Virus record (IMG/VR): IMGVR_UViG_3300045973_000169
Coordinates: 142,639 to 206,638 of that record
Direction: 5' to 3' (one strand)
DNA: 64,000 bases
Of the stretch, positions 2,287 to 64,000 are shown piece after piece. Every line of letters begins with the position of its first letter. The first letter of the stretch is position 1. The notes under the pieces were generated by a model, which did not search any database, was not told the origin of the DNA, and saw only the letters and a list, made by a program, of their open reading frames with translations. The position numbers were made by a program, and so were the translations under genes.

Positions 2287-4338
2287 TTATTTCACCGAAA
2301 TATAAACACTATTTATCGTTGGAGTTTTATATTTATTATCAGTAGACATTTTTATTTTAACCGAAGAGAATAAGCTATCTGAATTTAGATTATATAATAT
2401 CTGAGAGCTATATTGATTCTGGATTTTAGGTAAGATAATATACCTTTTTAGAGAAGGTGAGGAGTCTGAATTTGCTCCATCAAAACTGAATAAAGTATCA
2501 TCAGTTTGTAAGCTATTTATATCTGCAAATGTTAATAACCTATTAAACATAATGCCTACAGGTCTCCTATTTGACTGAGCAGCTATATAAGAAGCAGTGA
2601 TGTACTTTACAGTTCCAATAGGATTAATCCTTAGTCGTCCAGTGAATGGCTCTATTGTATACGTCCCTTGGAGATTTGGAGTTGAACTTAATGTTAAGGA
2701 ATATTCATTCCCATAGTTATCTAAGATAATCTCTGTTAATGGAATGAATGACTCTCCAAATTCAATTGTATTAGTTGAGCTTATATCGAATGATTTCGTT
2801 TTTCTTTCATCTATAGTCAATTTATTCTGAGCATTATATGCAGGTAACCCAGAAAATAAATAGGCAAAGTTATATTGGTTCCTTGTAGTATCTCCATCAA
2901 ATAGATCTATATTAAAATCCATATTCATCTGATGAACTTGTATCACAGAAAAGCCAATTGGGATTTTGATATTACCAGTATACTCTTTATTATTAATTAA
3001 ACATTTTAAACTACCTATATTAACATAAACATTATCATAATAATTTAACAAGAATGTTGTATAATAATTTCCAGAAAGAGTCCAGTTATTATATCTACTT
3101 CCACTAGCCGAGAAACTTAAATAGTCTTTATTCAATCCATATATAATGGATGACTTCTTATAATTCATGTCCCACTTCTGATCTGTTGATCCTATCTCTA
3201 ACGAATAAAAATCTTTGCCAGAGATTGTCTTAGTTACAAGATCAGTCTCTTTGAATCCAAATGCATACTTAAGTCTATAAGATGTTACATCTAAGTCATC
3301 ATCTTTATAAACATTATTATAACTGGTTACATCTTTATTCGAAGATATAGATAGCATTGAATTTATATTATTGAAATTATATCCTAATGCATTATATGAA
3401 AGCGATAGGCGAGATATCTCTTTAGTAAGTCCTATCTCTGTATTCTTTGATTCGAATAATCCAAATCTTGAGAATTGGATATCTTTAAATATATGGATAT
3501 CTTCAATTTGAATAGATGAAGGTTTATCTGTATTCGTATTCACTGTAGATAGTTCGATTATAATAGTATCACAATCTATTTGGTCAAATGTAAATAGTAT
3601 CTCATTAGAGTCTAGTAACGATGAGTATTGAGTTACTCCTAGTTTACTATAAGTTACTATTATCTTATTTATATTAGCAGAAGCCTTAAAATAAATCGCA
3701 TTAGTCTTAATCGCATTAACTAAAGATAATGTCATTCTATAACTTATAGATGGATTTTTACTCTTTATTTTTATTGATGGATTAGTTATAAGAGGTAATT
3801 TAGTTATAAGTCCAATATTTGAAAACTGGATTTCATCCGATGAATATTCTGTTATTGTTAAATTGTCATTATATAAGGAAGCAGAACTAATGAAAAATGG
3901 TAGGGTTATATACTTCCCTATCTTACCACAAAAGCTTTCTTTTGTTTGGTTAGAAAATCCATTATCAATATTTATACATGTATAGCCTAATAAGTTACTG
4001 ATAATATCCTTCGCGTATGGAAGCCTAGTCTTGATTCTTTCATATACAATGTTATAAACATCAACTAAGTTTTTGTTAATTAAGTATGCATTATTCGCAG
4101 AATTATATATAGATGATATGCATGAGATTATTCTTGATGCATTCTCTGTAGAGTCAGATGATTTTAAATCAGATTTATATGCAGTGGATGGAATATTCTC
4201 AGGAGAAAATATCTTGTTAATCCAGATCTCATCAGAAGCATAGATAGATGATAGTGAATTCAAGACTCTCTTATTTACAATCCCATTAAGTAAATCTGTT
4301 TTAACTAATTCATTTAGAATATCATTTTTTAGGCTCAT
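2287..4338 (-). CDS. Large hypothetical protein, probably baseplate/virion structural (683 aa)
   Basis: Long Asn/Ser/Ile-rich ORF with an ATGA overlap upstream, lying downstream of baseplate genes. Function is inferred from context only. Confidence 0.6.
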   Translation of the reverse strand: MSLKNDILNELVKTDLLNGIVNKRVLNSLSSIYASDEIWINKIFSPENIPSTAYKSDLKSSDSTENASRIISCISSIYNSANNAYLINKNLVDVYNIVYERIKTRLPYAKDIISNLLGYTCINIDNGFSNQTKESFCGKIGKYITLPFFISSASLYNDNLTITEYSSDEIQFSNIGLITKLPLITNPSIKIKSKNPSISYRMTLSLVNAIKTNAIYFKASANINKIIVTYSKLGVTQYSSLLDSNEILFTFDQIDCDTIIIELSTVNTNTDKPSSIQIEDIHIFKDIQFSRFGLFESKNTEIGLTKEISRLSLSYNALGYNFNNINSMLSISSNKDVTSYNNVYKDDDLDVTSYRLKYAFGFKETDLVTKTISGKDFYSLEIGSTDQKWDMNYKKSSIIYGLNKDYLSFSASGSRYNNWTLSGNYYTTFLLNYYDNVYVNIGSLKCLINNKEYTGNIKIPIGFSVIQVHQMNMDFNIDLFDGDTTRNQYNFAYLFSGLPAYNAQNKLTIDERKTKSFDISSTNTIEFGESFIPLTEIILDNYGNEYSLTLSSTPNLQGTYTIEPFTGRLRINPIGTVKYITASYIAAQSNRRPVGIMFNRLLTFADINSLQTDDTLFSFDGANSDSSPSLKRYIILPKIQNQYSSQILYNLNSDSLFSSVKIKMSTDNKYKTPTINSVYISVK

Positions 4339-6182: not shown

Positions 6183-6191
6183 TATTTAACC

Positions 6192-8722: not shown

Positions 8723-8723
8723 C

Positions 8724-15367: not shown

Positions 15368-15766
15368 CTATCCCCTATAAATTCTTTGATTCTCTATATC
15401 AACGACTAGTTTAAATGTATCAGCGCCATCTAGTCGATTTGAGAACTTAATTATTAGATTGATATGTCTATCATTTGTTTCACTTATGAGTATTTTATAA
15501 TCATTCGGAGATAATAAGCCATTAGTCTGTAATGCATTATTGATTGCAGACATAATGTTATCTTTTGTATAGGAAGTTTTGGTTTGGAAAATGAAAGAGT
15601 CTAACCCTGCAGCAATATTATCAAGAATAAAGTCCTCATTTCTAGCGACTAATCTTCTTTCAACTGTATGCATAGTTGACTTTTGAGTACTGTCTTCTAT
15701 GATTATATCATCCAGAAGAATTATATCATCTGAATTATCTACTTTAAAATCAATTATCCCTAGCAT
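15368..15766 (-). CDS. Baseplate wedge subunit, gp25/GpW-like
   Basis: Size (132 aa), position directly before baseplate J, and the D-F...D-I-I-L...AGLDSFI...I..AL pattern. Confidence 0.7.
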   Translation of the reverse strand: MLGIIDFKVDNSDDIILLDDIIIEDSTQKSTMHTVERRLVARNEDFILDNIAAGLDSFIFQTKTSYTKDNIMSAINNALQTNGLLSPNDYKILISETNDRHINLIIKFSNRLDGADTFKLVVDIENQRIYRG

Positions 15767-15781
15767 GTTTGTTATTAACCT

Positions 15782-16677: not shown

Positions 16678-19600
16678 TTAAACCTTACCTAATTCTTTTT
16701 TAAATTGCCAATAGTAACTTAGTACTGCATTTATGTGATCTGTATTTTTCATAAATTGAGGTCCATGTCCTGCATTGTATGCTGATACTGCTCTAGACAC
16801 ATCCCCATTTTCAGTTTGTATTAAATCAAATAAATACTTAACTCCATAGTCTATATTTGTTTTAGGATCAAATGGATCTTTACCATGGGTTCCATCCATA
16901 GAAGGATGAGCTTTCCCATTTATTTGCATTAAGCCTCTATCATTCTTGTCCTGTACCCCTATTGCTTTTGGGTTCCATCCACTCTCTCTTTGTATCAATC
17001 CATAGACAACTTCTGGCTCAAGTATATATTTCTTTGTTCCATTTAGTTTACTTAATGCTTCATCAACCATAGGCTTTAACTGGTTAAACATACTATCTTG
17101 TCTTACTATTTCTTCTGTGATCGAATATGATTTTAGTTTCATAGATCCACTAGGTGTTGATGCAAAAGCATTACCAGTAAATTGTATCCCTGGATCCAAT
17201 ATATCAGCAGCAAGTTTAACTGGTTCATAATCACTGAGAGAACTATATGCTTCATTAAATGCATCTTTAGCATTTATAACCATACCCTTCATATGCATCC
17301 ACATGTCATTATTTCTATAACCTTCAAGACCCGGCATTAACATAGAATCTTTAAACCAGATTGGCGAAATAACTACGATGTTTCCTTTTGTAGCAGCTTC
17401 TATTGCAAACATCTCAACTATAGATGGGAGTTCCATTACAACACTGAGAGCTAATAGCATTGATACATTCCTTGCTAATGGTCCACCTAATAATTTCTTT
17501 CCACCTTCAATAAGTTTCGATCCAACAGCTTTTGTACCAGCAGAATATTTACCACCAAATAAACCTTTAGGCTTCATCTTATTTAATAATACTTCATACT
17601 CTTTTTCTGTATTAACATTTATCTTAGTGTCTTTTAAAAGATCTTTCTGTGATTTTGATAAATCTTTCCAAGCTGTTTCTTTCTTCGCTAATATCTTTTC
17701 CATCGAAGCTATTACTTGCTTATCTACAATAGTCTCGGCGGCAAGTGCTGCATCTACTGCAGCAGCCTTAAGTTCTCTTGTGTAATCGGCGGTCTGTGTA
17801 GCCCATCTATTTAAGAAGTCAGGCACTTTCTTAGGCATTAAGTTAGATAGATATTCTCCTGGAGTTATCCTTCTGAATACAGTTTTTACTGCTCCAGCAA
17901 AAACATCAGAGAAAACATATCTTCCACTTTGAACGACTGAATTACCAGCGGCAACAAGTCCTCTTTTTGCTCCACTTGATCCAACAACTGCTGCTGTTTT
18001 ACCAGCATAAGCAAGTGCTGTATCTGCATAAACAGAATATTTCCATTCGACTACATTCTCTGCCCAGTTAAATTTATTAAGAGCATCTAGTGTATCAGTA
18101 GGTAAGCCATTGTATTTATTTACAAATGTCTCATTTTCTCTTGCTTGTGCAAAATGTTTATTTGCTTCAAGTAATCCATTAGCTACAAGTGAGAATCCTA
18201 ATGATGTCCAAGGACCTGTTGTTGCTCCAAGGACTAATGATGTAGCATCTATTGCTAATCCTGCAGCTCCTCGTTCATTCCAATAGTTACTTACCTTACC
18301 AATTATATATTTACGTCTTAAATCACCAGCAGTTGAGTAAGCTGTATCATTTATCTTACAAACCATATTAGGGACAATATGAGTAGTGAAACCCATTTCA
18401 GAATCAAACTTATGGATTACAGTTTCTACTTGAACCCAACCATACATCTTAGATACTTTATCACAAATATAAATCTTATCATAAGGTTCAATCTTCGAGT
18501 TTCCTCTAAGAATAAGTGTCCCGCCATATAGACGTTCTACTCCTTCCTTAAGTAATCCAAGTGCATATTGTTGAGATAGTCTTTCATCATTTGTCCAGTC
18601 AATAACTGCGAACTTCCTTCTTAAGGCATGATTAAATATATCTGCATTAGCAACATACTCTTCTGGCTTACCAGACCCATCAGACGATTTTGAAATTACA
18701 ACTGAATTCCATCCTCTTTCTGGAGTTGCTCTTACTCCATTATAAATTATATTATCCCATGATGTTGCTATATGATGTTTCTGGAAAGGAACCATTGGTA
18801 AGATTCCAGTAGATAAAGTCTCAGGATCTATATTCCCTAGTGTGTCTCTTCTAGGACTATAGTCCATAATAGCTTTTCTGTATCTATCATTGTTATTTCC
18901 AGACTCTCTTGTTGCATCTGATCTCTCAATAAATGAAGGAGCCATTGCAAGAAGTGGATCATCTGTTCTGAAATAATGGAAGTCGGGATCTCCTAAGAAC
19001 AATGTAGACCTAGAGCCATAAGGTCTTACATCTAAAGCATATCCAGGATAGATCCTTTGGATGTCTCTTAGCACATCCCAAACAGTCCTTTGGTTATTTG
19101 CTTTAAGTGTTACATTAGATCCAGAAGCACTTGCCCATATATCAAAAGCGAATATATTTGCATCTATGGGATTATGTCCATTCTCAAGAGTGTCAGCCAT
19201 ATGTCTAAATAATTGAGTTGTAGCTTTATCTGCATTAAATAAATCTCCACGAAGTCTACCATAAAGATTGCTAAATGTAGTCGAGAATCTTTCATTCCCT
19301 TTACATGACTCTCTGAATAAAGTCATTTTCCCAGCCTCAATCATCTTTCTACCATAATCACCTTCGGCTCCAAATGATGCATAGGCTAATGCTCCAACGC
19401 TTGTCCCGACTGCCGCTGCCGCTAAAGGAGATGCACCTATCATCCCAATAGCTGCTGCCCCAGCGAATGTTCCACCAGTGACTAATGCACTTGTACCCGT
19501 TCCAATAAGCCCAGTAATATTAGCTCTTGACATAATGAAGTTCATCAGGTTCTTATTTCTTCTGGAGAACTGTTCTATATGTGAACCAAACATTCTACCG

Positions 19601-24279: not shown

Positions 24280-24282
24280 TAA

Positions 24283-29262: not shown

Positions 29263-29264
29263 TG

Positions 29265-35697: not shown

Positions 35698-36423
35698 TTA
35701 TTGAATATCTTTTAGTATTAGTTCTATATTTTTCATTTCCCAATAAGGAATTTCTAATAACTTAATATTGTTATCTTTACAATACTGCTTTTTAGTACTA
35801 TCTCTTTGTTGTAAACTTACAAGAGCCTCATTACCTCCCCAGTATTTAACAGACCTATAATGTTGCATCCCATTAAACTCTATACAAACCTTATGGTTTG
35901 GTAGGTAGAAGTCAAATCTCAATGGGAGCCTTTGGTCTTTAAAGAATAAATTATCAAATGTTTTTTGCTGAATATAATCAATGTAATTATTCTCTAGCCA
36001 TTTTTTAATTCTTATTTCGCCTTTTGAAATATTACACTTAGGACATCCTTGTCCTTTTAAGTGATCATTTGGGGTTTGCCAAAAACTCCCATGCTTATGG
36101 CATATAATACAAACCTTAATTTTGCTTTGTTTGTATTCAACTAAAGAATAATCAAATTTATTTTCATGGATAGTTTTTGCTTTTCCTAAGAACTCAGGCT
36201 TAGACATTTTTGAACTATTCCCAATTATAGAATAATAACACTTTGGGCAACCATTTCCTTTTAAATGATTCTCAGGGGCCTGTTCAAATTCTCCATGCAA
36301 ATTACAAACAATAAGAACTTTTGTTTTATTATTTATATATTCAACCTTAGAGTAGTCATATTTAAAATTATGGATTTGATTAGCTTTATCAATAAGGTCA
36401 TTAGCAGTTAATCTTTTAGGCAT
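35698..36423 (-). mobile_element. Free-standing homing endonuclease-like gene (two zinc-ribbon repeats plus Vsr-like PD-(D/E)XK nuclease domain)
   Basis: Two repeats 'YDYS.VEY....KV.I.C..HG.F.Q.P..HL.G.GCPKC', then 'SKGE..I..WL', 'RFDFYLP...IEFNGMQHY'. Confidence 0.85.
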
Positions 36424-36447
36424 AGATAGAACCTCCTTGGTCTATCT
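36424..36447 (-). promoter_or_regulatory. RBS-sequestering hairpin directly upstream of the homing endonuclease start
   Basis: Minus strand reads AGATAGA-CCAAGGAGGT-TCTATCT-ATG: a perfect 7-bp stem enclosing the AAGGAGG Shine-Dalgarno sequence. Confidence 0.75.
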
Positions 36448-36464
36448 GTTAATAACCAAAGTGA

Positions 36465-36869
36465 TTAACCTTTTACCTCAAGAATCAACTCTAATGCTTT
36501 TGCAGGATCTTTGAAGAAATTTGACATTACAAGGATTTGATATACTAAAGTAAGCGCAACTCCAGCCTCTAAAGTATTTAGTGCGATTGGGTCCATCTTA
36601 GGCCATACGATACATGTGTTAAGAATATAATCATGGGTCATATCTTTATCTAGTTTCTTTGCTCTGATATCTCTGAACTCAGCCCAAGAAAGTTTTTTAA
36701 ACATATAAAAGGAATAATCATCTTCATTACCTAAAAATGTAGCATAAAGCTTTTCATTTCTAGCTTTAAGTTTTTCGAATGTAGCTCTATCTAATTTGTT
36801 ATAAGTAACCTTTTCCCAGTTGATATCTCCATAAAAATCATGAGTAGCTACTGCTGGTGTATCTTCCAT
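36465..36869 (-). CDS. Putative tail assembly chaperone (paralogue 1)
   Basis: 134 aa, follows the tube-like genes, and carries the 'FKKLSWAEFRDI...CIVWP...AGVALTL' pattern. Confidence 0.6.
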   Translation of the reverse strand: MEDTPAVATHDFYGDINWEKVTYNKLDRATFEKLKARNEKLYATFLGNEDDYSFYMFKKLSWAEFRDIRAKKLDKDMTHDYILNTCIVWPKMDPIALNTLEAGVALTLVYQILVMSNFFKDPAKALELILEVKG

Positions 36870-36906
36870 TATTTACCTCTAAGCTTTTATTTTATTACAA
36901 TTGTTA

Positions 36907-38301
36907 TTAAACTATCTTTCTTGCAATAAAGTTATACTGTTCTTTGACTGGAACACCAGATACTGCTAATGCATGACTATGACCAGTTAACTCACAGCTT
37001 TCTAATATCTTATGTGTATTCCCATTATAGTCGAACATAATATTGAATTTACCAAAGTCTTCAGGTCTCCAATCTCTCTTCGTTAATTCTCCTCTAAGAT
37101 TATTAGCAGATCCCATAGTGTCTAATTGGGCAGCAAGATCCATTCCTGATTGTTTTTCTTTTTCTTTCAATGCAGCGATCTCTTTTTTAATTGTCTCTAT
37201 CGAAGTTTTAGATGTATCAACTTTCTCTTTTTGGGTTTTTATTGCAGCAAGATTCTTTGTCTTCTCTCCTTGGATATCTAATGTAGGAGTGCTTTCTAAA
37301 AACTTAACTTGATCTGTTTGTACTCTAGCAAGAGTGGTATCGAAACTAATAGCCTTTTTAAGATTAGAGTCACCATCTAACATTCCTTTTAACTGATTAC
37401 TATTTTGTGTAATAGCAGAGTTAAACTGTTGTGTAGTTTCATCTCTTAATGTTAATAGATTGTCAACCACTAGATTATTGTCATCTATTCTTTTCTGTAC
37501 TTCATTTATACCATTAGTATAGTTAAATCTATTAGCATCAGATAGCACTGGTTCATTTTGTCCAGGTGATAACAATGACTGTAAGTTAGAAAGGGTTGTT
37601 TGTAAATCACTTACTTCTTGGTTTATTCTATTTAGTTCATCATTTATACTCTTTAAATTATCTTCATGTTGTTTATTTAACTGGACTAACCCTCCACTGG
37701 CTTGAGGATCATTGATGCCTTCATTAAATGTTTTAAGTTTCATCCTAAGAGCTTCTTGCTCTGTGTCTCCAAGCCCGTTTATAAATGAGTCCTTATCTGA
37801 CTGTATATTATTAATCTTTACTTTAAAGTTATTAGTCTGAGCTAATTTCTCTTGGTCTTGTATCACTAGATTTGCATCTATTTCTTTACCATAAGATTGT
37901 AATTCAGCAAGCTTTCTCTTATCATCTTGAAGAGTTTGTTGTAATTTCTTATAAGCAATAAGTTTATTTTTAAAGTTTTGAGCTGCTTTGCTATTTTCTG
38001 CCTGCCTATCAATCGACTTTTGTGCTGATTCTCCAGGTTGTAGGTTCTTTAATATAGCCCATAGATATTTATCATGCTTATAGTTAATTGTAAAACTGCC
38101 ATATATAATAACTTGACCTGGGAGGATAGCATCAAAATGCTTAGAGTTATATCCATAGATAGGCTCTTTTGATTCCTGATATGTATATTGGATATCATAG
38201 CATTCATCTAATAAGATCCCTCCTATATAAATCCTACCTTGGGCAGCAGTTACATAGTCTACTTTAATCTTCTTATCTGATATAATAGGATACTCTACCA
38301 T
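36907..38301 (-). CDS. Tail-tube-like paralogue (probable tube initiator) with long coiled-coil insertion
   Basis: N-terminal 'QESKEPIYGYNSKHFDAILPGQVIIYGSFTINY' aligns with the tube's 'REAGPLYVMGKKSPIAIPKGKRGIGGSFIL'. It ends in 'YNFIARKI' and has ~300 aa of Q/K/N/L heptads in between. Confidence 0.65.
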   Translation of the reverse strand: MVEYPIISDKKIKVDYVTAAQGRIYIGGILLDECYDIQYTYQESKEPIYGYNSKHFDAILPGQVIIYGSFTINYKHDKYLWAILKNLQPGESAQKSIDRQAENSKAAQNFKNKLIAYKKLQQTLQDDKRKLAELQSYGKEIDANLVIQDQEKLAQTNNFKVKINNIQSDKDSFINGLGDTEQEALRMKLKTFNEGINDPQASGGLVQLNKQHEDNLKSINDELNRINQEVSDLQTTLSNLQSLLSPGQNEPVLSDANRFNYTNGINEVQKRIDDNNLVVDNLLTLRDETTQQFNSAITQNSNQLKGMLDGDSNLKKAISFDTTLARVQTDQVKFLESTPTLDIQGEKTKNLAAIKTQKEKVDTSKTSIETIKKEIAALKEKEKQSGMDLAAQLDTMGSANNLRGELTKRDWRPEDFGKFNIMFDYNGNTHKILESCELTGHSHALAVSGVPVKEQYNFIARKIV

Positions 38302-42883: not shown

Positions 42884-43615
42884 TTAGCTTTCTAAGCCAT
42901 ATTGTACTACAATTTGTTCTAAATTCTTTTCTCTAAAATCTCTTACCTCAGAGAATCGAATTTGGTAATCTTGAGTTTTGAATTTTCGTACACTTGTTTC
43001 ACGATACATTATATCTTCATAACTCCCTGTCCAGATTATATCTCTTAGTCCTTTATGTTTAAAATACCATATGTTAGTATCTATGATCTCTTTTAGCATG
43101 TTAGCCCTTGGACGTATATCTTGAAAGAATTTTCCCCACACTTTGAACTTTATGTTTGCTTCTACGTCCCTGGTATATCTGATAATAGAATAACCCGTAT
43201 ACTCTGGGTCATCATATGTTCCTGCATATTTCCATTTTAAATTTTTGAATCTACTTTCATTAATCTGATGTTGCCCTAAATTCCCATGGGTTTCACTAAC
43301 TGTATAGGTAGCTATTCTCATATCTGGCAAGTAGTTATTTATGTATAACTGTATATTTTCATCATACAAATTATTATTCAGTGTTGGGATTTCGCTTGCT
43401 TCTATTTCTTCTGAAAAGATAATTTGTTTATTCTGAGGGATTTGAAATACTTTATTGTATGTATCATTTGCTTCTATTACTAATGTCATAAATCCATCAA
43501 CTGTTTTGATTATACCCTCATTCAAAGCAGGTTCAGCTATTCGAACAGGCATATTAAGTGGCCCGTCTAGCAGTTCAAAAAAAACTTTTTTTGCGAATGA
43601 TTTTGTCTCTGACAT
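42884..43615 (-). CDS. Putative tail terminator / completion protein
   Basis: Position directly before the sheath, size 243 aa, 'IKFKVWG' strand pattern; mainly synteny. Confidence 0.5.
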   Translation of the reverse strand: MSETKSFAKKVFFELLDGPLNMPVRIAEPALNEGIIKTVDGFMTLVIEANDTYNKVFQIPQNKQIIFSEEIEASEIPTLNNNLYDENIQLYINNYLPDMRIATYTVSETHGNLGQHQINESRFKNLKWKYAGTYDDPEYTGYSIIRYTRDVEANIKFKVWGKFFQDIRPRANMLKEIIDTNIWYFKHKGLRDIIWTGSYEDIMYRETSVRKFKTQDYQIRFSEVRDFREKNLEQIVVQYGLES

Positions 43616-43650
43616 TATCTAACCTTAGTCTATTTTATTGTTATTAACCG

Positions 43651-49614: not shown

Positions 49615-50571
49615 TTATTTAGATACTGATAAAAGAAAAATCTTTAACGTATCATTGTTTATTTTATAATAAAAATTAATATCTCTCTTTTGGTCTAAGA
49701 TCATATCTATTCTTTTGATTTTAATCTTATCCATTAATTCTTGTGGAGATTTTATTGGTCTATTAAACTTAATTGTTATTGGATTATATTTAACGTTATT
49801 AAACGTTACATTATCTGGAATAGTTTTTACTATTCTCATTGGATTCTGTAATTGATCTAGTATATTCCCAGGGGGAACAGTTAAACTAGTTGACTCTGGA
49901 GTAAGTGTATTATATTTACTTGTTTCAAAAGTTGTCTTATATATAGAAGTAAGCCCACTCGCCTTAAATACATCAATAGAGATAGAGTCTCCAATATCAA
50001 AACTCCCGGAGAATGAGACTTTAAGTTCTCCAAGATCTACTTCTTGTAATTGTTGATATGTGAATTCTCCTACATAAATAGCGCCTTTAGTCACATCTAT
50101 TCTGTTTCCAGATAATATATCAATAACAAATGTATCGTTAGTGTTCCCAGTATATGAACTTACAATTTCTAATGTTCCACTAGCAGAAGCACTTCTTAAA
50201 TATATAGGTTCTGATACAGTTACAGATGATATAAACCTAGAAGTGTCATCTCCAGGAAAGATAGAGATATAATGTTGTCGTTCAGGGACTAATGATGAAG
50301 TTGGCTTAATAAATAATTGGTTACCATTAAGAGTATAATTAAATTGATATTGGATAAACTCATCTGGACTATTATCAAGACTATTTGAAGAAGTATCTAA
50401 TATAGCAAGATCTGGACCTGTCCATAAGCCTGTAGATATAGTATAAAGACTAATGCCATTCTTTACTGTGAATGGGTCTATTGGGCTATCAAACTCAATC
50501 AAAAAAGTTGAATCTAGTGGAAGGTTGATGCTTCCATCTACAGGTGTCATATTAAGTACAGAAAGACTCAT
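49615..50571 (-). CDS. Ig-like (Big_5/SbsA-type) domain protein (318 aa)
   Basis: Two 'V....P.dg..n.......i.i.F..pi' starts: 'VLNMTPVDGSINLPLDSTFLIEFDSPI' and 'IVKTIPDNVTFNNVKYNPITIKFNRPI'. Confidence 0.7.
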   Translation of the reverse strand: MSLSVLNMTPVDGSINLPLDSTFLIEFDSPIDPFTVKNGISLYTISTGLWTGPDLAILDTSSNSLDNSPDEFIQYQFNYTLNGNQLFIKPTSSLVPERQHYISIFPGDDTSRFISSVTVSEPIYLRSASASGTLEIVSSYTGNTNDTFVIDILSGNRIDVTKGAIYVGEFTYQQLQEVDLGELKVSFSGSFDIGDSISIDVFKASGLTSIYKTTFETSKYNTLTPESTSLTVPPGNILDQLQNPMRIVKTIPDNVTFNNVKYNPITIKFNRPIKSPQELMDKIKIKRIDMILDQKRDINFYYKINNDTLKIFLLSVSK

Positions 50572-50599: not shown

Positions 50600-50613
50600 T
50601 TAGTGTTATTAAC
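50600..50613 (-). promoter_or_regulatory. GTTAATAACACTAA promoter-like motif just downstream of a terminator
   Basis: Intergenic copy identical over 14 nt to the copies at 60794-60807 and 62820-62833. Confidence 0.6.
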
Positions 50614-50629
50614 TAAAAATTCTAAGTAA

Positions 50630-50650
50630 GGGGAGAGAGTTACTCTCCCC
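50630..50650 (-). terminator. Probable terminator hairpin after the 151-aa gene
   Basis: 8-bp stem ggggagag/ctctcccc; weak U-tract (TTACTTAGAATTTTT) on the minus strand. Confidence 0.55.
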
Positions 50651-50658
50651 ATATTAGA

Positions 50659-51126: not shown

Positions 51127-51756
51127 TTATATTATGTTGCTAAATTTATATGGTTCTCCAGTTATCCTTCTTAAATCTAATGGTTTCCCATCTGGGGCCC
51201 TTATTGCATTTATTATTTTCATCCCCTCTAACGTTGGAGGACTTACTAGTCTAGGCGTAGATAGAACTGTTGATGGTAAAAATAAACCACTTACTTTACC
51301 TGTTACATCTAATGAAACTATTGTTTGTTGTGATCTTACTGTTGACGGAGATAAAGTTCCATTTACTAATGTTATTACACCATTTGTTCCAATTATTTTA
51401 ACTGCATTAACAGTTATTAATGATTGAATAGTAGATATATAAATTAGTCCATCTGAAATTATTACATTACCAGAAATATTAATCTGTTCAATGGTCTGTA
51501 AACTATCAACTGAAGAAATATTTAAGTATCCACTTTGTACTCCAGATACTTCTGCCTCAACTGTTATTAAGTTAGGAGCATATACAGCTCTATTATTCCC
51601 TAATACAGTAGGGATACTTAGGCTTGCACTATTAAGATCAATTGTATATTGTCTTGTTTGTAAAGGTTCTACATTTCCATCTTCATCAATAGAGAAAAAT
51701 TTAATCTCTGTGTCTTGAGTTAGAATTATAGGACCAGTATATAGGATAGTAGCCAT
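51127..51756 (-). CDS. Repeat protein beginning with the C-terminal half of an Fn3-associated/chitobiase-C-like domain (209 aa)
   Basis: Starts 'LYTGPIILTQDTEIKFFSIDEDGNVEPLQTRQYTI', followed by ~5 repeats related to those of 55622-58063. Confidence 0.7.
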   Translation of the reverse strand: MATILYTGPIILTQDTEIKFFSIDEDGNVEPLQTRQYTIDLNSASLSIPTVLGNNRAVYAPNLITVEAEVSGVQSGYLNISSVDSLQTIEQINISGNVIISDGLIYISTIQSLITVNAVKIIGTNGVITLVNGTLSPSTVRSQQTIVSLDVTGKVSGLFLPSTVLSTPRLVSPPTLEGMKIINAIRAPDGKPLDLRRITGEPYKFSNII

Positions 51757-51785
51757 TTATTCCCATCACTAGATAGTAAGATATT

Positions 51786-52178
51786 TTAGTTTACTGTTGC
51801 TACACTTATAGTAAATTCTGCTGGAGTATAATACGTTCCTGCAGACAAAGAAGTATTCCCTGTATCAATTAGCTTGATAACTCCATCTGTTGCTCCACCC
51901 ATTGTTTTTAATATAATTGTATTAGCGATACCGCTAATGTTACACAATATCTGTGTTCCAGCTAAAACTTTAATACTAGACCCAGAGGTCAACTGGAATG
52001 AAGCTGGCGTTACAGTTCTAGATGCTAGTACATTGGTGATCATACTAGCTTGCAAGACTCCATTGCCATCAATTGGCTGTGATATCATATTACAATAAAG
52101 AATTGTTGTAGTAGTATCTATAATATTTTGTAGCATTAAATCAATAACTGCTTTATTTATTGCTTTTGATGTTGCCAT
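51786..52178 (-). CDS. Small beta-rich virion protein, family member B (130 aa)
   Basis: Similar size and pattern to the adjacent 131-aa gene (L..I....T.I..C..QP; C-terminal P.F.I); AGGAG RBS. Confidence 0.7.
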   Translation of the reverse strand: MATSKAINKAVIDLMLQNIIDTTTTILYCNMISQPIDGNGVLQASMITNVLASRTVTPASFQLTSGSSIKVLAGTQILCNISGIANTIILKTMGGATDGVIKLIDTGNTSLSAGTYYTPAEFTISVATVN

Positions 52179-58063: not shown

Positions 58064-58098
58064 TAAAAATCCTCCAAACTTCATATACAGATACACCT

Positions 58099-58107
58099 GT
58101 TAATAAC
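58099..58107 (-). promoter_or_regulatory. GTTATTAAC(A) promoter-like motif downstream of the capsid terminator
   Basis: Lies in the gap between the terminator (58116-58146) and the next RBS. Confidence 0.55.
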
Positions 58108-58115: not shown

Positions 58116-58146
58116 AAAAAGAAAGGGTCCTCTTTCAAGGACCCTT
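58116..58146 (-). terminator. Rho-independent terminator after the major capsid gene
   Basis: Minus strand AAGGGTCCT-TGAAAG-AGGACCCTT followed by TCTTTTT. Confidence 0.85.
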
Positions 58147-58175
58147 CTATTACATTATAGTATTTAAAATATTTC

Positions 58176-59372
58176 TTATACCATTTTGTCGCTAACGGTA
58201 AGATCTTCTGACCACTTAACATCAGCAGCCTGTGCATTAACGTTTGTAACACCGAATTCAGCGAAACGGTTAGGTACAACTTTAACATTTTTCACGACAC
58301 CAACTCCACGACCCTCGTTCAGGATTGCAATACCATACTTCTCACGAAGCTTGATATTCTGGATATCACGCTCTGGATCACTCCATTGATGCTGATTAAT
58401 TTCTTCAGCTTGAACGATAGCTCCTGCATTACCTGAGTCTACAAAGTAGATAGAGGTTAATTTATTGACCGGATCAAACGGAACCTGTGGGGAAACCATC
58501 ACGCGGAATGGAATCTGTGCCCAAGCAGGAAGAACCGGAGTACCTTTAAAGTCGACAGGTGAAGTTTCACCAGGACGTGCACCTTTTCCAGCCATACCTT
58601 GACCTTCGAAGAAGGAATCACGGGAAACACCTTGAACGTCATATCCACCAATAAGTGGTCCGCCGCCATGTCTCCATGCGAATACTTTTAAGAACGGGTC
58701 TTTTGCCCAGATTGCCCAAGACAGAGGATGCATAACAATCGTGTCAGGAGCATAACCTTCTACAAGCATCGAAGCATAGATATCGAAGAAGTCTTCTGAT
58801 CCAAAGCTGTAGTTAAGTGCCCCAGTACCATCTTTACCAGACAGAGGACGTCCAATAACCGAAGCTGCTGGATTCTTGTTGTCTGCTAAAGTCAGACCCT
58901 GTTTTTCGAATAAACGGAAACAGATGTGATTTTTTCTACGAGCAAAAGCTTTACCAGCAGCTTTCAGCCATAGTGCGATAACGTCATACTGAGACTGATC
59001 AATCATTTCTTCAGTAAGGGAGAGTTTGATACCGTATTTACGGATGTCAACACGGATAACAGATCCTCCACCCATTGTGATTTCTTCAGTTCCGTATTCA
59101 GCACCAGGAGCGATCTCATCGATCATTTCCATTGCGCCTTCAGCAGGAAGAGTAATATAAATACCCTCTTTCTGAGAAATTTTTGTAAATAGTTGGTTTG
59201 CGATCAGAAGAGGTTCAGAAGCTTGACGAACGACCTCACTAATTGCGATTGGCAGATACTTAGAAAGATCACCATGATTTAAGATGTCTCTAAGTTTTAG
59301 ACTTTCTTTATTAGCATCAGTAAGCTTTAGCTCCTGACCAATTGCTAATAGTTGTTTTTCTAATTCACTCAT
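58176..59372 (-). CDS. Major capsid protein (HK97 fold, 398 aa)
   Basis: 'ISEVVRQASEP', 'EIAPGAEY', 'IRKYGIKLSLTEEMIDQSQYDVI...AAGKAFAR', 'IKLREKYGIAILN'; strong GGAGG RBS, terminator downstream. Confidence 0.9.
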   Translation of the reverse strand: MSELEKQLLAIGQELKLTDANKESLKLRDILNHGDLSKYLPIAISEVVRQASEPLLIANQLFTKISQKEGIYITLPAEGAMEMIDEIAPGAEYGTEEITMGGGSVIRVDIRKYGIKLSLTEEMIDQSQYDVIALWLKAAGKAFARRKNHICFRLFEKQGLTLADNKNPAASVIGRPLSGKDGTGALNYSFGSEDFFDIYASMLVEGYAPDTIVMHPLSWAIWAKDPFLKVFAWRHGGGPLIGGYDVQGVSRDSFFEGQGMAGKGARPGETSPVDFKGTPVLPAWAQIPFRVMVSPQVPFDPVNKLTSIYFVDSGNAGAIVQAEEINQHQWSDPERDIQNIKLREKYGIAILNEGRGVGVVKNVKVVPNRFAEFGVTNVNAQAADVKWSEDLTVSDKMV

Positions 59373-59409
59373 TGTTAATATTCCTCCATGCCTAATAGCA
59401 TTTTAATTT

Positions 59410-60594: not shown

Positions 60595-60627
60595 TGTTTA
60601 TTTCCTCCGAAATTTGTGTCTCTTAAA

Positions 60628-62523
60628 TTATACTCTAGAAAATGCTCTTCGTAGAGCTGAAACTATTTCTGCATCAGAGAGTGCTTTTTCTTCTTTTTGT
60701 TCGTCAACAATCTTAATATCGGAACTTGCAGAAGTGTCACTATCGTCTAATGCATCCTGTAGTGTGGGGTCGTTTACGGATTTAATATCCTCTTTAGTGT
60801 TATTAACGTCCTGTACTTTAAACTTAGCTTTTAGCTGTCTAAAGTCACTAACTTGTCCTACTAATACATTGTATGGATGAGAAAGTAATTTAGCTCTTTC
60901 TTCTTCTACACTATCAGTAAGTAATCCTAAAGTTTGTTTTAAATCAATGATTTCATCTACTTTAGATTGTCTAATCTGAACATTAAGATCACGATTAAGC
61001 TCATCAAGTAGAGTTACTTCTTCTTTTGCTTCTTGTAATTCATCTTGTAGTGAAACAAGATTATCTAATCCAGATAGTTGCTCTGTAGTAGCTACGCCTT
61101 GTCCTTTACCACTTAAGTAAGAACCGATACTTGCATCTAATGCTTCACCAACGAATTTAGAATCTAGTCCAATAACCATATCAAAGATACGAGTAACAGG
61201 AGATTTACCTTCATCATCAGTTAGTTTAGTAGGGTCAAGAGATTCTACCATAGTTTTTAATTCAGTGATAACTTCATCAATACTTCTTACAGTTTGATCA
61301 GTACCTTCTGCATCAGCAATCTTTACTTCTTCTTTTACTTCCTTCTCAAAGTTAGCTTCAATTCCGAGTTTCTTAGCAGCTTTACCAATTGATGATTGAG
61401 CTTTAATAACTTCAGCAGGAGTAAGATCTTCTGCACAGTCTAATAGTTCAATAGCAAGTTTTACATTAAGTTCATCATGTAAAGGAAATCTACGTTTAAT
61501 CTCATCTTCTGTCTTCTGAACAATAGCAAACTGGGAATCCTTCATGTCATCTTCAAGAGTTAACTTACCTTGATCTTCTTCAGTAAGCTCTGCATCTTGA
61601 ATCTTAATTTCCTTTAGTTTGTCTCCAAATTCATTGACATAAGATAAAGAAGTTACTTTCTTGTCTTCTGCCTTACGTGCCATTATAGCCTCCCTGTTAA
61701 CTATCTTACAAATGTTATCGCAACACACGATTGTTTTAGTTTCATCTGCAAGTTTAAAAAAGTCTCTCTTATTGATAAAATCCATTTCAATTAAGAGGTT
61801 TTCTACTTCATACTCAATTTCTTCAACTATACCATCATGTATCTTAGTAATCTTACCATGTGGATCAGCAGCTTTCTTATTTCTTAGGAATGATAGTTCT
61901 TCATACTCTAAGTCTTCAGCTAGCATGAAACCACCAGCTCTATGATGAAAGTGGTCACATATACCATCAGCTACTTGGTCTTGTAAACAATGGGAACAAA
62001 TAAGTCTCTTAGGATCTGCACCAATAGAAACAGTTGCAAACTCTTTAGCTAGTACTCGTCTAATACCTTCTTCATCATTAAGCATACCTACAGTTTCAAC
62101 ATATCCAAGACCATTGAACTTACTATCTTTCCTTTGGTGCGGGATAAGAAGATCATTACACATAGAGATATACTCTTCTGTAGTTAAGTCTTCTAGTTTG
62201 TTAAATGCAGAAAATTTATTATAATAATCTGTTAGTTTATAATCGACAGCTATAATACTACCAAATCTCTTAGATACTTTAGGTCTATGATTTTCAATAA
62301 TAGGTTTAGGAGCTGGATGAATAAATGTACCGATATTATCTTTTACTGTATCATGACGATAAACTACAACATTACCATTAAGCATACCAAAATGAGAAGC
62401 ATCAATAGTAACAAGAAGTTCTTCTTTCTTTCTTACTCCATCTTCTAATCTAATAAGAGCTTGTTCTGATAAATTAAAATTATGTACTTCTCGTATTTTT
62501 AATACACTATTATGAAATATCAT
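60628..62523 (-). CDS. Prohead protease fused to acidic coiled-coil scaffold (631 aa)
   Basis: 'KPIIENH79' and 'TVS166IG' fit the His/Ser of herpes/HK97-type head proteases. Adjacent 'CSHC...CDH' cluster; acidic helical C-terminus. Confidence 0.8.
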   Translation of the reverse strand: MIFHNSVLKIREVHNFNLSEQALIRLEDGVRKKEELLVTIDASHFGMLNGNVVVYRHDTVKDNIGTFIHPAPKPIIENHRPKVSKRFGSIIAVDYKLTDYYNKFSAFNKLEDLTTEEYISMCNDLLIPHQRKDSKFNGLGYVETVGMLNDEEGIRRVLAKEFATVSIGADPKRLICSHCLQDQVADGICDHFHHRAGGFMLAEDLEYEELSFLRNKKAADPHGKITKIHDGIVEEIEYEVENLLIEMDFINKRDFFKLADETKTIVCCDNICKIVNREAIMARKAEDKKVTSLSYVNEFGDKLKEIKIQDAELTEEDQGKLTLEDDMKDSQFAIVQKTEDEIKRRFPLHDELNVKLAIELLDCAEDLTPAEVIKAQSSIGKAAKKLGIEANFEKEVKEEVKIADAEGTDQTVRSIDEVITELKTMVESLDPTKLTDDEGKSPVTRIFDMVIGLDSKFVGEALDASIGSYLSGKGQGVATTEQLSGLDNLVSLQDELQEAKEEVTLLDELNRDLNVQIRQSKVDEIIDLKQTLGLLTDSVEEERAKLLSHPYNVLVGQVSDFRQLKAKFKVQDVNNTKEDIKSVNDPTLQDALDDSDTSASSDIKIVDEQKEEKALSDAEIVSALRRAFSRV

Positions 62524-62801
62524 AGTTTTACCTTTTGTAAGTTATCCTTTTTGAAGATAACATTAGTGCCATTAGCCAATTGGATTGTTGCATTATTCTT
62601 GTCGTCAATAGATAAAAGTTTGCCTTTCATTCCATTAAGACCACGAACATAAAAGTTTATAACACTAAGCTCTTCGCCTATATCAAAGATAACCTCATCA
62701 ATAAGCTCTTCGATAGCATCCATAGTTTCAGATACTTCTTCAGCAATAGTATCAATAACTTCAACTGCTTCTTCTATAATTTTAGCTTTTTTCTTAGCCA
62801 T
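62520..62801 (-). CDS. Small hypothetical protein: acidic N-terminus plus SH3/KOW-like C-terminus (93 aa)
   Basis: 'GMKGKLLSIDDKNNATIQLANGTNVIFKKDNLQKV'; ATGA and TAATG overlaps with both neighbours. Confidence 0.65.
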   Translation of the reverse strand: MAKKKAKIIEEAVEVIDTIAEEVSETMDAIEELIDEVIFDIGEELSVINFYVRGLNGMKGKLLSIDDKNNATIQLANGTNVIFKKDNLQKVKL

Positions 62802-64000
62802 TATTTATCATCCTCTATTTTAGTGTTATTAACGCATTTTAGTGTAAGGTTACTATTAGGATGGAAAGGAGGAATAACTTCAAGTATATTCTCTCTTGTT
62901 ACACTTATTTCTTTCCCTAATAATTCTGTCCCTTCACTAGATAGGCTATCTGCCATTGTGCAAATAACAAACTTATTAATGTTATTTTCTAAACACGCTA
63001 GGCTATACCCATAATTATAAGCTCTAGACTGTTCTGTCTTATTTGTTATAGCTAATCTATTAGCTCCTTTATTTACATAAGAGCTATCTTTGCTTAACTT
63101 CTCTGATACATCGTCTCTTAGTTTGTCTAGTGGACTGAATATATCATGTTGGATTTTTATATTAGAATAGTCTAAACCAAGATCAGTATAAGCATCTTCT
63201 ATCCCTTGGTATAGTTTATCTTTCATATTACTCTTGATCTCATCATAAGCAGACTTAGTAGCGAACATTATCCCAAGTTTATTAACCGACTTATTCTCAT
63301 CCTTAAGCCCATTGATTGCGAAAGTAAATCTATCTTTAATCCCTTGAGCTTGTTGAGCATCTGTTAATTCAAGTGAGTCTTGAGCTTTCTTTTTAACTAT
63401 ATTGGAATTAGTACCAGCACTCTTTATAGAGTCTCTCTTAGCAGCAGATCCAGTAGACTTAGCATGTCCAGGGACAATAGGCTTAGTATGTGTTTTCTTA
63501 GCTGGGGCTCCAGGTTGACTAGTCTTTGTAACGGTTTCTACTGTTGTAGCATGAGCAACCTTACCTTCTTGTTGAGCATACTTATCTCCATATTCAGTAT
63601 CAAGTAATGTCTTATGTGGAGGTGTAGCCCCAAATAGAGCTGGGTGAGTATACATTAAATCTTCATCAGATAGAGTCTTATCTCCACGCTTATTACGAAC
63701 TTCATGTATTGTCTTAGTTCCTTTAGAGAATAGATCTGCCTCATGGTTCTCTTGTCTAATCTTCCATTCGATATCAATCTCTTGGAATAATAACTTAGCC
63801 CTATTTTCTGGAGCAAAGTCAGCACTGAATGGTGATTGTAAGAATAGTTCAGTTAGAACTTGTTCTTCGAATTGTCTTGATAATTCTTGTTGTAGGAATT
63901 TAACTGTATCCATTAAAGCTTTAGAAGCTTCTTGAGCCTGAGCTTCTCCACCACCTGAATCAGCTACAGCCATATCAGCAGGAGATACACCTAACCCAAC
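62801..64000 (-). CDS. Portal protein C-terminal part (5'-truncated) fused to a Mu-F/SPP1 gp7-like domain
   Basis: The frame is open to the window edge (VGLGVSPAD precedes the track Met). Portal-like 'LGVSP', 'LFSKGTKTIHEVRNKRG'; then 'KTEQSRAYNYG' and 'PPFHPN'. Confidence 0.75.
   Translation of the reverse strand, partial: VGLGVSPADMAVADSGGGEAQAQEASKALMDTVKFLQQELSRQFEEQVLTELFLQSPFSADFAPENRAKLLFQEIDIEWKIRQENHEADLFSKGTKTIHEVRNKRGDKTLSDEDLMYTHPALFGATPPHKTLLDTEYGDKYAQQEGKVAHATTVETVTKTSQPGAPAKKTHTKPIVPGHAKSTGSAAKRDSIKSAGTNSNIVKKKAQDSLELTDAQQAQGIKDRFTFAINGLKDENKSVNKLGIMFATKSAYDEIKSNMKDKLYQGIEDAYTDLGLDYSNIKIQHDIFSPLDKLRDDVSEKLSKDSSYVNKGANRLAITNKTEQSRAYNYGYSLACLENNINKFVICTMADSLSSEGTELLGKEISVTRENILEVIPPFHPNSNLTLKCVNNTKIEDDK

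What the first reader, a model, noticed from the sequence alone, without database searches (positions are those of the whole stretch)
2530..62833. Recurrent oriented motif GTTAWTAACA: candidate phage-specific late promoter
Seen by eye, not exhaustively: core 9-mers at 2531, 15771, 36448, 43640, 50605, 58099, 60799 and 62825, plus a one-mismatch copy near 36903. All eight are followed by A on the coding strand. Five lie in very short intergenic gaps, two of them just downstream of terminators. Three share GTTAATAACACTAA exactly, and two share GTTAATAACA(A/C)TAAAATAGA. Two copies sit inside coding sequence (both encode VNNTK) upstream of head genes. It does not resemble a sigma70 -35/-10 pair. 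Inference: it is read by a phage sigma factor or phage polymerase; the near-palindromic core could instead be a regulator site.
Basis: partly seen in the sequence, partly recalled or inferred. Interest (0 to 1): 0.6.

Follow-up and report, generated by a model that had tools for sequence, protein, structure and literature searches.

The report
Promoter motif of a phage polymerase
A strictly conserved, oriented 10-letter DNA word (GTTAWTAACA) sits just upstream of late structural genes and of most homing-endonuclease genes in a 207-kb pond phage, and is most likely the start signal read by the phage's own, previously undescribed single-chain RNA polymerase.

Summary
The whole 206,638-bp phage genome holds 28 loci (about 2.5 expected). 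Every one is oriented with the local genes. 23 of the 29 strand-specific matches are intergenic, typically 15-38 nt before an SD+ATG. One-mismatch copies are almost absent. The exact 10-mer survives in relatives while its flanks do not: behind the capsid-gene terminator, inside the gene about 1.4 kb upstream of the capsid gene, and at the head of the whole late arm.

It is not a purely "late" signal. Fifteen of the 28 loci precede free-standing homing-endonuclease genes (HNH, GIY-YIG, DUF723 types), mostly in the early/replication arm.

The 1659-aa protein shows no polymerase features. Outside the window, however, the genome encodes a 1030-aa protein with an invariant DxDGD motif. Its confident model matches single-chain two-barrel RNA polymerases (Thermus-phage gp64, QDE-1, RDR2). 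No sigma factor, T7-like polymerase or multisubunit polymerase was found.

Best reading: a core promoter of this phage polymerase, which homing-endonuclease cassettes also carry. No RNA data exist, so initiation and the polymerase-motif link remain inferred.

The parts
62824..62833 (-). Exact motif GTTAATAACA in the last 11 codons of the 390-aa ORF, 22 nt before the ATG of the 93-aa ORF (62520-62801)
   Evidence: A relative (L005 6515) has the exact motif at the same distance from the capsid gene (-3486 against -3461), there intergenic.
60798..60807 (-). Exact motif inside the 631-aa ORF, 203 nt before the ATG of the 394-aa ORF and about 1.4 kb upstream of the capsid gene: candidate internal promoter for the head genes
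   Evidence: The exact 10-mer is kept at the homologous place in L001, L002, L004 and L005 while the flanking codons differ (VNNTK, VNNK, VINNK). L003 has TTTAATAACA there.
58176..59372 (-). Major capsid protein gene (context; used to find relatives)
   Evidence: Pfam Phage_capsid_4, 1.2e-12; relatives at 68-89% identity.
58122..58147 (-). Intrinsic-terminator-like hairpin after the capsid gene, 14 nt upstream of the next motif copy
   Evidence: 11 pairs, T-rich tail; dG -17.0. L001, L002 and L004 have hairpins of different sequence at the same place, each followed by the exact motif.
58098..58107 (-). Exact motif GTTATTAACA, intergenic, 34 nt before the SD-preceded ATG at 58063 of a tail-protein gene
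   Evidence: (tail PHROG hits).
50621..50658 (-). Strong hairpin (GGGGAGAG...CTCTCCCC) with a T-rich tail, 7 nt upstream of the next motif copy
   Evidence: dG -18.8; sequence.
50604..50613 (-). Exact motif GTTAATAACA, intergenic, 32 nt before the ATG of the 318-aa Ig-like-domain protein (49615-50571)
   Evidence: Big_5.
43639..43648 (-). Exact motif, intergenic, 23 nt before the ATG of a 243-aa virion structural protein (42884-43615), upstream of the tail sheath gene
   Evidence: phrog_20284; sheath. The G001 ortholog (45% identity) keeps the exact motif upstream.
36902..36911 (-). One-mismatch copy TTTAATAACA, intergenic, 32 nt before the ATG of the 134-aa ORF (36465-36869): possible weaker site
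   Evidence: The same variant replaces the exact motif in L003. Not conserved upstream of the G001 ortholog.
36447..36456 (-). Exact motif GTTATTAACA, intergenic, 23 nt before the ATG of a homing-endonuclease-like gene
   Evidence: The motif lies inside DNA that is absent from G001, where the two flanking genes abut.
35698..36423 (-). Free-standing homing-endonuclease-like gene (241 aa, treble-clef DUF4379/DUF723). It is one of four paralogs in the genome, and all four are preceded by the motif
   Evidence: Pfam; paralogs at 43-53% identity.
15770..15779 (-). Exact motif GTTAATAACA, intergenic, only 3 nt before the ATG of the 132-aa ORF (15368-15766)
   Evidence: G001 has GTAATTAACA after the ortholog of the upstream gene.
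2530..2539 (-). Exact motif inside the 683-aa ORF, 243 nt before the next start codon. Function doubtful; it could be one of the 2-3 copies expected by chance
   Evidence: No conservation test was possible.

Best explanation
GTTAWTAACA is the core promoter for a phage-encoded RNA polymerase. The genome has two divergent arms. The + arm (13-126 kb) carries early and replication genes, among them a 1030-aa single-chain two-barrel RNA polymerase. Its gene and its neighbours lack the motif, so the host polymerase presumably transcribes them. Once made, the phage enzyme, alone or with a small specificity factor, would start transcription at or within a few bases after the motif. The invariant 3' A or the conserved TA two bases later is a candidate start. 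This would drive the late arm from its head (genome 12905) and re-initiate at internal points, for example after the capsid terminator. It would also drive the many homing-endonuclease cassettes, which carry their own copy of the signal. Shown: the motif's strictness, orientation, position and conservation, and the polymerase fold. Inferred: initiation at the motif, and which protein reads it.
For: (1) 28 loci against about 2.5 expected, all co-oriented with the genes; 23 of 29 matches intergenic. Real one-mismatch intergenic copies are almost absent, so the motif is all-or-none.
(2) All 28 palindromic 9-mer cores carry the A on the gene-sense side (p 6e-8). T at +12 and A at +13 are enriched. 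This directionality is not expected for a symmetric operator.
(3) The motif ends 15-38 nt before the SD+ATG. At genome 31269 the SD starts 4 nt after the motif, so any transcript containing that SD must begin at the motif or within about 3 nt after it.
(4) Two copies follow strong terminators. The terminator-then-motif arrangement recurs in three relatives with different stems.
(5) The motif heads the whole - arm. The exact 10-mer, with unrelated flanks, sits at that place in G001, L024 and L021; L025 has a one-mismatch copy.
(6) The in-ORF copy is kept through changes in the surrounding codons.
(7) The 1030-aa protein has invariant D648-x-D650-G651-D652 in 26 homologs. Its AF2 model has pLDDT 84 and pTM 0.78. 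Foldseek matches QDE-1 at E 6e-12. VIA Z scores are 15.8 to Thermus-phage gp64 polymerase, 15.1 to RDR2 and 14.3 to QDE-1.
(8) No Sigma70_r2, Sigma70_r4_2 above cut-off, T7-type polymerase, or beta/beta-prime domain in the genome.
(9) There is no motif upstream of the polymerase gene, and no + strand copy from 13 to 33.9 kb.
(10) Precedents: YonO transcribes SPbeta late genes (PMC5467207); the two P23-45 polymerases each have their own promoter motif (PMC10770324).
Against: There is no transcript data of any kind: the only run holding this DNA is a DNA metagenome. The polymerase-motif link rests on co-occurrence in G000, G001, L024, L021 and L025. Relatives whose polymerase is only 24-28% identical keep the identical 10-mer, whereas G001 (52% identical) uses relaxed versions. 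This is odd for direct read-out by the enzyme and would fit a separate, better conserved reader. The 9-bp core is a perfect palindrome, the hallmark of dimeric DNA-binding proteins. A conserved small RHH-like protein is encoded right behind the first copy. For the related crAss-like gp66 polymerase no common promoter motif was found (bioRxiv 10.1101/2020.03.07.982082). Two in-ORF copies (window 2530, genome 127066) have no obvious gene to serve.
Confidence: 0.6

Rival explanations
1. The motif is a T4-late-type promoter: a single short AT-rich element near -10, read by the host RNA polymerase after a phage-encoded sigma-like or adaptor protein that the family libraries do not recognise has re-programmed it. 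The 1030-aa polymerase would have another job, for example other gene classes or priming.
For: It is a short, AT-rich single element close to the start codon with no -35 partner. It precedes both late genes and homing-endonuclease genes, as T4 late and middle promoters do (own knowledge of T4 seg, mob and I-Tev genes).
Against: No sigma region 2 or region 4 domain is present in the genome. Most early proteins have no family, so this cannot be excluded, but nothing supports it positively. A G/C-anchored palindrome is unlike known -10 elements. The phage carries a dedicated polymerase with no other detectable conserved motif in its intergenic regions.
Confidence: 0.15
2. The palindromic core GTTAWTAAC is chiefly an operator for a dimeric phage regulator. 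A candidate is the conserved 49-aa ribbon-helix-helix-like protein encoded right after the first copy. It would switch the adjacent promoters on or off, or act as the specificity factor that recruits the polymerase.
For: The core is a perfect 9-bp palindrome. The first gene of the late arm is a conserved 47-55-aa protein with a beta-alpha-alpha pattern, and its nearest named Atlas clusters are RHH families. It is 76% identical in L024, where the polymerase is only 24% identical.
Against: The strict one-sided A and the gene-sense orientation at 28 of 28 loci are not explained by a symmetric binder alone. The RHH assignment is only a lead: no Pfam or PHROG hit and no PDB fold match. The position at or just before the transcript start means a core promoter must overlap it in any case.
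Confidence: 0.12
3. The motif acts in RNA: it is a processing site for an endoribonuclease, or a translational operator in the 5' leader of polycistronic transcripts.
For: It lies 15-38 nt upstream of start codons, often in very short gaps within operons, and only on the sense strand.
Against: Copies sit right after strong terminators and at the head of the divergent late arm, where little or no upstream transcript is expected. Palindromy has no use in a 9-nt RNA, where at most a 3-bp stem can form. The distance to the ATG varies from 3 to 126 nt.
Confidence: 0.05
4. The motif belongs to homing-endonuclease biology as a DNA element, either a cleavage or homing site or a cassette end, and its presence before structural genes is secondary.
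For: 15 of 18 HNH, GIY-YIG or DUF723-like genes have it, against about 10 of about 250 other genes (Fisher p 2e-15). The window's endonuclease insertion carries it.
Against: At least four unrelated nuclease families share the same word at the same place, 15-35 nt before their SD+ATG and always in the sense orientation. Thirteen loci have no endonuclease nearby. These include the conserved sites at the head of the late arm and after the capsid terminator in relatives.
Confidence: 0.03

Closest known systems
YonO of Bacillus prophage SPbeta and its late promoter (PMC5467207)
   Same: A phage-encoded, non-virion, single-chain two-barrel RNA polymerase of about 100 kDa with a DxDxD site, which transcribes the late structural genes.
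   Different: No sequence similarity is detectable: the profile search found only 30 relatives, and Pfam, PHROG and PDB-sequence searches found none. YonO starts one operon from one site whose sequence was left undefined. Here a defined 10-mer recurs at 28 loci, in a 207-kb myovirus-like genome.
Thermus phage P23-45 gp64 (non-virion) and gp96 (virion) polymerases with their GC-rich and AT-rich promoter motifs (PMC10770324)
   Same: Homologs of gp64 (P32 gp64, P74 gp62) are the best structural match (Z 15.8 and 15.7). In that system each enzyme is tied to a short conserved motif upstream of mapped starts.
   Different: Those enzymes serve pre-early, early and some middle genes. The protein here is about 400 residues longer and aligns over a greater length to QDE-1 and RDR2. 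The motif sequence is unrelated. The motif here serves late genes and endonuclease genes.
T7-type phage promoters
   Same: All-or-none conservation, strict orientation, multiple copies heading late genes, and possibly inclusion of the start site.
   Different: The enzyme fold is unrelated; no T7-type polymerase is present (PF00940). The conserved core is 10 bp rather than about 23 bp, and it is palindromic.
T4 late promoter TATAAATA, and phage-promoter-driven homing-endonuclease genes (own knowledge)
   Same: A single short AT-rich element with no -35. Free-standing and intron-borne endonuclease genes carry their own phage-specific promoter.
   Different: T4 uses the host polymerase with gp55, gp33 and gp45. 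No sigma-like protein was found here, and a phage polymerase is present.
N4 virion-polymerase hairpin promoters (own knowledge)
   Same: An inverted repeat within the promoter.
   Different: N4 needs a 5-7-bp stem with a 3-nt loop extruded from supercoiled DNA. GTTAWTAAC can form at most 3 A/T-rich pairs around a 3-nt loop. N4 promoters serve early genes and are read by a virion enzyme.

Membership tests
Promoter specific to a phage-encoded RNA polymerase | Conserved, oriented sequence over-represented immediately upstream of genes | tested here: met
Promoter specific to a phage-encoded RNA polymerase | The phage encodes its own RNA polymerase | tested here: met
   A 1030-aa two-barrel enzyme, identified by its invariant DxDGD motif and by fold. 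Catalytic activity was not tested.
Promoter specific to a phage-encoded RNA polymerase | The polymerase gene itself and the earliest genes lack the motif, because the host must transcribe them | tested here: met
   no + strand copy between 13.2 and 33.9 kb, and none upstream of 17155.
Promoter specific to a phage-encoded RNA polymerase | Primary 5' ends at a fixed distance from the motif | not testable with these tools
   Only one DNA run holds the sequence.
Promoter specific to a phage-encoded RNA polymerase | Motif-dependent initiation by the phage enzyme | not testable with these tools
   Needs in vitro transcription or a two-plasmid reporter.
Promoter specific to a phage-encoded RNA polymerase | The motif co-occurs with the enzyme in relatives | tested here: met
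   G001, L024 and L021 have the exact motif and L025 a one-mismatch copy. All encode the polymerase within about 5-7 kb of the motif at the head of the late arm. The sample is small, and no relative lacking the enzyme was available as a control.
Sigma-70-type bacterial promoter | -35 and -10 hexamers 16-18 bp apart, with the start about 7 nt after the -10 | tested here: not met
   TTAACA resembles TTGACA, but nothing is conserved 17 bp downstream, and the ATG is usually only 22-35 nt after the motif. The sigma-70 scan shows no enrichment.
T4-type late promoter | A phage sigma-like factor (gp55 class) that re-programs the host polymerase | tested here: inconclusive
   No sigma region 2 or 4 domain was found. 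No gp55-specific model was run, and most early proteins are orphans.
N4-type hairpin promoter | Inverted repeat giving a 5-7-bp stem and a 3-nt loop | tested here: not met
   Read directly from the sequence: 4+1+4 palindrome, so at most a 3-bp stem around a 3-nt loop.
Single-chain two-barrel RNA polymerases (QDE-1, RDR, YonO, P23-45 gp64 clade), for the 1030-aa protein | DxDGD metal-binding loop in a double-psi beta-barrel | tested here: met
   D648, D650, G651 and D652 are invariant in 26 sequences. The loop aligns to the NADFDGD loop of the phiKZ beta-prime-like subunit, though the E-value is not significant (1.4).
Single-chain two-barrel RNA polymerases (QDE-1, RDR, YonO, P23-45 gp64 clade), for the 1030-aa protein | Overall fold shared with solved members | tested here: met
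   Foldseek E 6e-12 and TM 0.41-0.47 to QDE-1. VIA Z 15.8 (518 residues aligned) to P32 gp64, 15.1 to RDR2, and 14.3 (668 aligned) to QDE-1. Cellular beta-prime subunits score Z about 8 over residues 504-843.
Single-chain two-barrel RNA polymerases (QDE-1, RDR, YonO, P23-45 gp64 clade), for the 1030-aa protein | Sequence-level membership in a described family | tested here: not met
   No Pfam, PHROG or PDB-sequence hit. The protein belongs to a family of only about 30 representatives among 1.84 billion.
Ribbon-helix-helix operator | An RHH protein that binds the palindrome | tested here: inconclusive
   Atlas feature hits to RHH clusters score 0.92-0.93, and the AF2 model shows an N-terminal extended segment plus two helices. 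There is no family or fold hit. Binding cannot be tested here.

The most novel reading that the evidence does not exclude
The 10-mer is a complete, minimal, palindrome-cored promoter read directly by a new family of single-chain two-barrel (QDE-1/YonO-like) DNA-dependent RNA polymerases. The signal stays constant across phages whose enzymes have diverged to about 25% identity. Unrelated homing-endonuclease cassettes use it as a portable expression plug that works in any phage of the group. It would be a rare sequence-defined promoter, with many copies, for this enzyme clade (YonO's was undefined in 2017, and none was found for crAss gp66). It could also serve as a compact orthogonal transcription system.
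Probability: 0.35. Interest if true: 0.75.

Novelty: new member of a known kind. Interest (0 to 1): 0.6.

Why it matters
Single-chain two-barrel RNA polymerases are viewed as minimal relatives of cellular polymerases, but how they find promoters is poorly known. YonO's promoter sequence was left undefined, and no common motif was seen for the crAss-like gp66. Here an uncultured phage lineage offers an enzyme together with a short, strict, 28-copy candidate promoter. This makes promoter recognition directly testable with one expressed protein and a 10-bp site. It also shows homing endonucleases of several unrelated families converging on the same phage-specific signal. That would restrict their expression to infected cells in which the polymerase has been made, and would make their cassettes portable among phages sharing the signal. 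A 10-bp promoter with a roughly 1000-aa polymerase could be a compact orthogonal expression pair.

Tried and rejected
2. Literature search for the 10-mer returned only primers and unrelated sequences.
3. tblastn of the 318-aa protein against INPHARED phages: no match.
4. Nothing supports it as a polymerase. It is too long to fold whole.
5. The -35 idea (TTAACA resembling TTGACA) was rejected: there is no -10 partner and the ATG is too close.
6. The hairpin-promoter idea was rejected because the stem is too short.
7. The sigma-70 and terminator scans showed no promoter enrichment.
8. A terminator precedes the motif at only 2 of 28 loci. This is supportive, but it is not a general rule.
9. The search for related loci failed with the 26-sequence alignment. 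With the 4-sequence alignment it found only G001.
10. The genome search on the Logan contig behind L024 is not possible.
11. Distant relatives L028-L031 (27% identity, GC 0.24) have no exact motif and are uninformative.
12. The RHH-like protein has no Pfam, PHROG or PDB fold match.
13. An RNAP alpha-CTD-domain protein lies next to the polymerase gene in L024 but is absent from this genome.
14. The costly profile search was used once, because Pfam, PHROG, PDB-sequence and word searches had left the 1030-aa protein open.
15. No genetic code other than table 11 was used.
Full report
**The observation**

The window is the last 64 kb of a single 206,638-bp virus record (GC 0.34). All the long ORFs listed in the window lie on the - strand. 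Dinucleotide shuffles give 0.66 on average and never 8. The contexts confirm each detail:
- The A follows the palindromic 9-mer on the gene strand in all eight copies.
- Five copies sit in short intergenic gaps.
- Two copies sit behind strong hairpins with T-rich tails.
- The shared extensions are as stated.
- Two copies inside ORFs read VNNTK.
- The one-mismatch copy TTTAATAACA is at 36902-36911.

**The whole genome**

There are 29 matches at 28 loci; one site is symmetric on both strands. Markov models of order 1-5 predict 2.2-3.3.
- 23 of the 29 matches fall in the 8.1% of the genome that is intergenic (p 2e-20).
- All 28 loci point the same way as the gene downstream.
- All 28 palindromic cores carry the extra A on the sense side (p 6e-8).
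- One-mismatch copies in intergenic DNA are almost all just the reverse reading of exact sites, so the element is all-or-none.
- It is the most intergenic-enriched 8-mer family, ahead of the Shine-Dalgarno words.
- Weak extra conservation follows it: T at +12, A at +13, A at +19.
- The motif ends 15-38 nt before an SD-preceded ATG in most cases.
- At genome 31269 the SD begins 4 nt after the motif. A transcript containing that SD must therefore start at the motif or within about 3 nt after it.

**Genome layout**

A + arm (13.2-126.3 kb) holds small early genes, replication and nucleotide-metabolism genes and at least 24 tRNA genes. A - arm holds terminase, capsid, sheath, tail and giant virion proteins. 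A relative's contig bridges the two ends of this record. The - arm therefore runs 12905 -> 1 -> 206638 -> 127588. The motif at 12905 is its first element.

**What lies downstream**

- In the - arm, 12 loci precede structural or unknown genes and two endonuclease genes.
- In the + arm region, 13 of 16 loci precede free-standing nuclease genes. The types are HNH (Pfam or a visible HH...N...CxxCH signature), GIY-YIG (one with NUMOD3), and a four-member DUF4379/DUF723 treble-clef family.
- Overall, 15 of 18 such genes have their own copy, and a sixteenth overlaps the end of one that does. Only about 10 of about 250 other genes have one (Fisher p 2e-15).
- In the window, the endonuclease gene at 35698-36423 is an insertion relative to G001, where the flanking genes abut. 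The inserted DNA starts 8 nt before the motif.
- The element is therefore not a late-gene signal in the narrow sense.

**Comparative evidence**

Capsid-gene relatives at 68-89% identity keep the exact 10-mer in two places:
- Directly after the capsid terminator, whose stem differs in each phage.
- Inside the upstream ORF about 1.4 kb before the capsid gene, although the neighbouring codons differ.

At the head of the late arm, the exact motif with wholly unrelated flanks is found in G001, L024 and L021. L025 has a one-mismatch copy. G001 otherwise uses relaxed versions before late genes: GTAATTAACA, CTTATTAACA, GCTATTAACA, GTTAGTAACA. This points to A-W-TAACA as the hardest core.

**The candidate reader**

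- A scan for the universal polymerase loop found NGDFDGD in a 1030-aa + arm ORF at genome 17155-20247.
- Pfam, PHROGs and PDB sequences gave nothing. The word search gave three homologs.
- In 26 aligned members, D648, D650, G651 and D652 are invariant, together with a few basic residues.
- The AF2 model is confident: pLDDT 84, pTM 0.78.
- Foldseek matches QDE-1 (E 6e-12), RDR2, crAss-like gp66 and the Thermus-phage polymerases.
- VIA-align gives Z 15.8 to P32 gp64, 15.1 to RDR2, 14.3 to QDE-1 over 668 residues, 10.1 to P23-45 gp96, and about 8 to cellular beta-prime subunits around the catalytic barrel.
- BFVD matches are uncharacterised phage proteins, P23-45 gp64 and crAss-like proteins.
- The genome has no sigma region 2, no region 4 above cut-off, no T7-type polymerase and no beta or beta-prime domains.
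- The polymerase gene has no motif upstream.

**Mechanism proposed**

1. The host polymerase transcribes the early + arm, including the phage polymerase gene.
2. The phage enzyme then initiates at GTTAWTAACA. This turns on the late arm from its head and re-starts transcription after terminators and before highly expressed head and tail genes.
3. It also expresses the endonuclease cassettes, which bring their own copy of the signal.

This parallels two known systems. YonO is a single-chain two-barrel enzyme that transcribes SPbeta late genes (PMC5467207). In P23-45, each phage polymerase has its own motif (PMC10770324).

Shown here: motif statistics, orientation, position and conservation, and the polymerase fold.

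**Caveats and rivals**

No RNA data exist. The only run holding this DNA is a DNA pond metagenome.

The identical 10-mer persists where the polymerase is only 24-28% identical, yet a 52%-identical relative relaxes it. A separate, better conserved reader therefore cannot be excluded.

The first gene after the head-of-arm copy encodes a conserved 47-55-aa protein. It has a beta-alpha-alpha pattern and RHH-like language-model neighbours. It has no family or fold hit. Given the perfect palindrome, it could be a specificity factor or an operator-binding regulator.

A T4-like scheme, with the host polymerase re-programmed by an unrecognised factor, remains possible.

RNA processing and a DNA role in homing are unlikely. 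Copies occur after terminators and at the head of the arm, and four unrelated nuclease families share the same word at the same 5' position.

**Verdict**

The kind of system, a phage polymerase with its cognate promoter, is known. This is a new member with unusual traits: a palindromic 10-bp core, an orphan two-barrel enzyme family, and use by endonuclease cassettes.

Only table 11 was used.

Noticed in passing
genome 17155-20247 (+), outside the window (L008:2155-5247): A 1030-aa orphan protein with an invariant DxDGD loop and a confident two-barrel RNA-polymerase fold. Its family has only about 30 representatives among 1.84 billion proteins. The N-terminus looks like a Rho_N/HeH domain (PF07498 is recorded on homolog P0003).
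   Followed up: yes
genome 12717-12866 (-), L007; orthologs at L024:6128-6271, L021:694-849, L018:7888-8055: A conserved 47-55-aa protein is the first gene of the late arm, directly behind the first motif copy in G000, L024 and L021 and about 230 nt behind it in G001. It looks ribbon-helix-helix-like (Atlas features, beta-alpha-alpha model) but has no family or fold hit. It is followed by a caspase-like Peptidase_C14 gene (4.7e-33) that is conserved in L024.
   Followed up: partly
L024:13052-14020 (+): In a distant relative, the gene right after the phage polymerase encodes a 322-aa protein with a bacterial RNA polymerase alpha C-terminal domain (PF03118, 2.3e-21). No such domain exists in the window's genome.
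   Followed up: partly
genome about 86.2-91.3 kb (L011, L012), plus 23.7 and 31.3 kb: A cluster of at least 22 tRNA genes is interleaved with HNH genes. A truncated tRNA-like 5' half (acceptor, D-arm, anticodon stem) abuts the motif at genome 90378-90416, just before an HNH gene. A complete tRNA-Leu follows that gene.
   Followed up: partly
window 16678-35111 (-), and genome 130441-136953: Three tandem giant ORFs (2533 aa with a C-terminal SLT lytic transglycosylase domain, 1659 aa, 1948 aa) and a fourth of 2170 aa. None has any other family hit. They are presumably virion or ejection proteins.
   Followed up: partly
contig ends: genome 1 and 206638; G002 (L020/L027): A 16.2-kb relative contig carries orthologs of genome 9338-10411 and of the capsid gene about 14 kb apart. 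The two ends of this 'linear' record are therefore contiguous in relatives, and the genome is probably complete and circularly permuted or terminally redundant.
   Followed up: partly
whole genome; in the window for example 45554-45563, 40418-40427, 24418-24427 (-): The 9-mer TTAWTAACA with a non-G first base occurs 11 times on the sense strand of ORFs and once on the antisense strand. These could be weaker internal sites or a codon effect. G001 uses such variants before late genes.
   Followed up: partly
genome 51395-51405: One site is fully symmetric (TGTTATTAACA) and so matches on both strands. Only the + reading has a gene (HNH, 51430-52167) downstream.
   Followed up: no
genome 60544-60679 (+): One motif copy is followed by 126 nt without an ORF before a signal-peptide protein gene. 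This could be a long leader or a small RNA.
   Followed up: no
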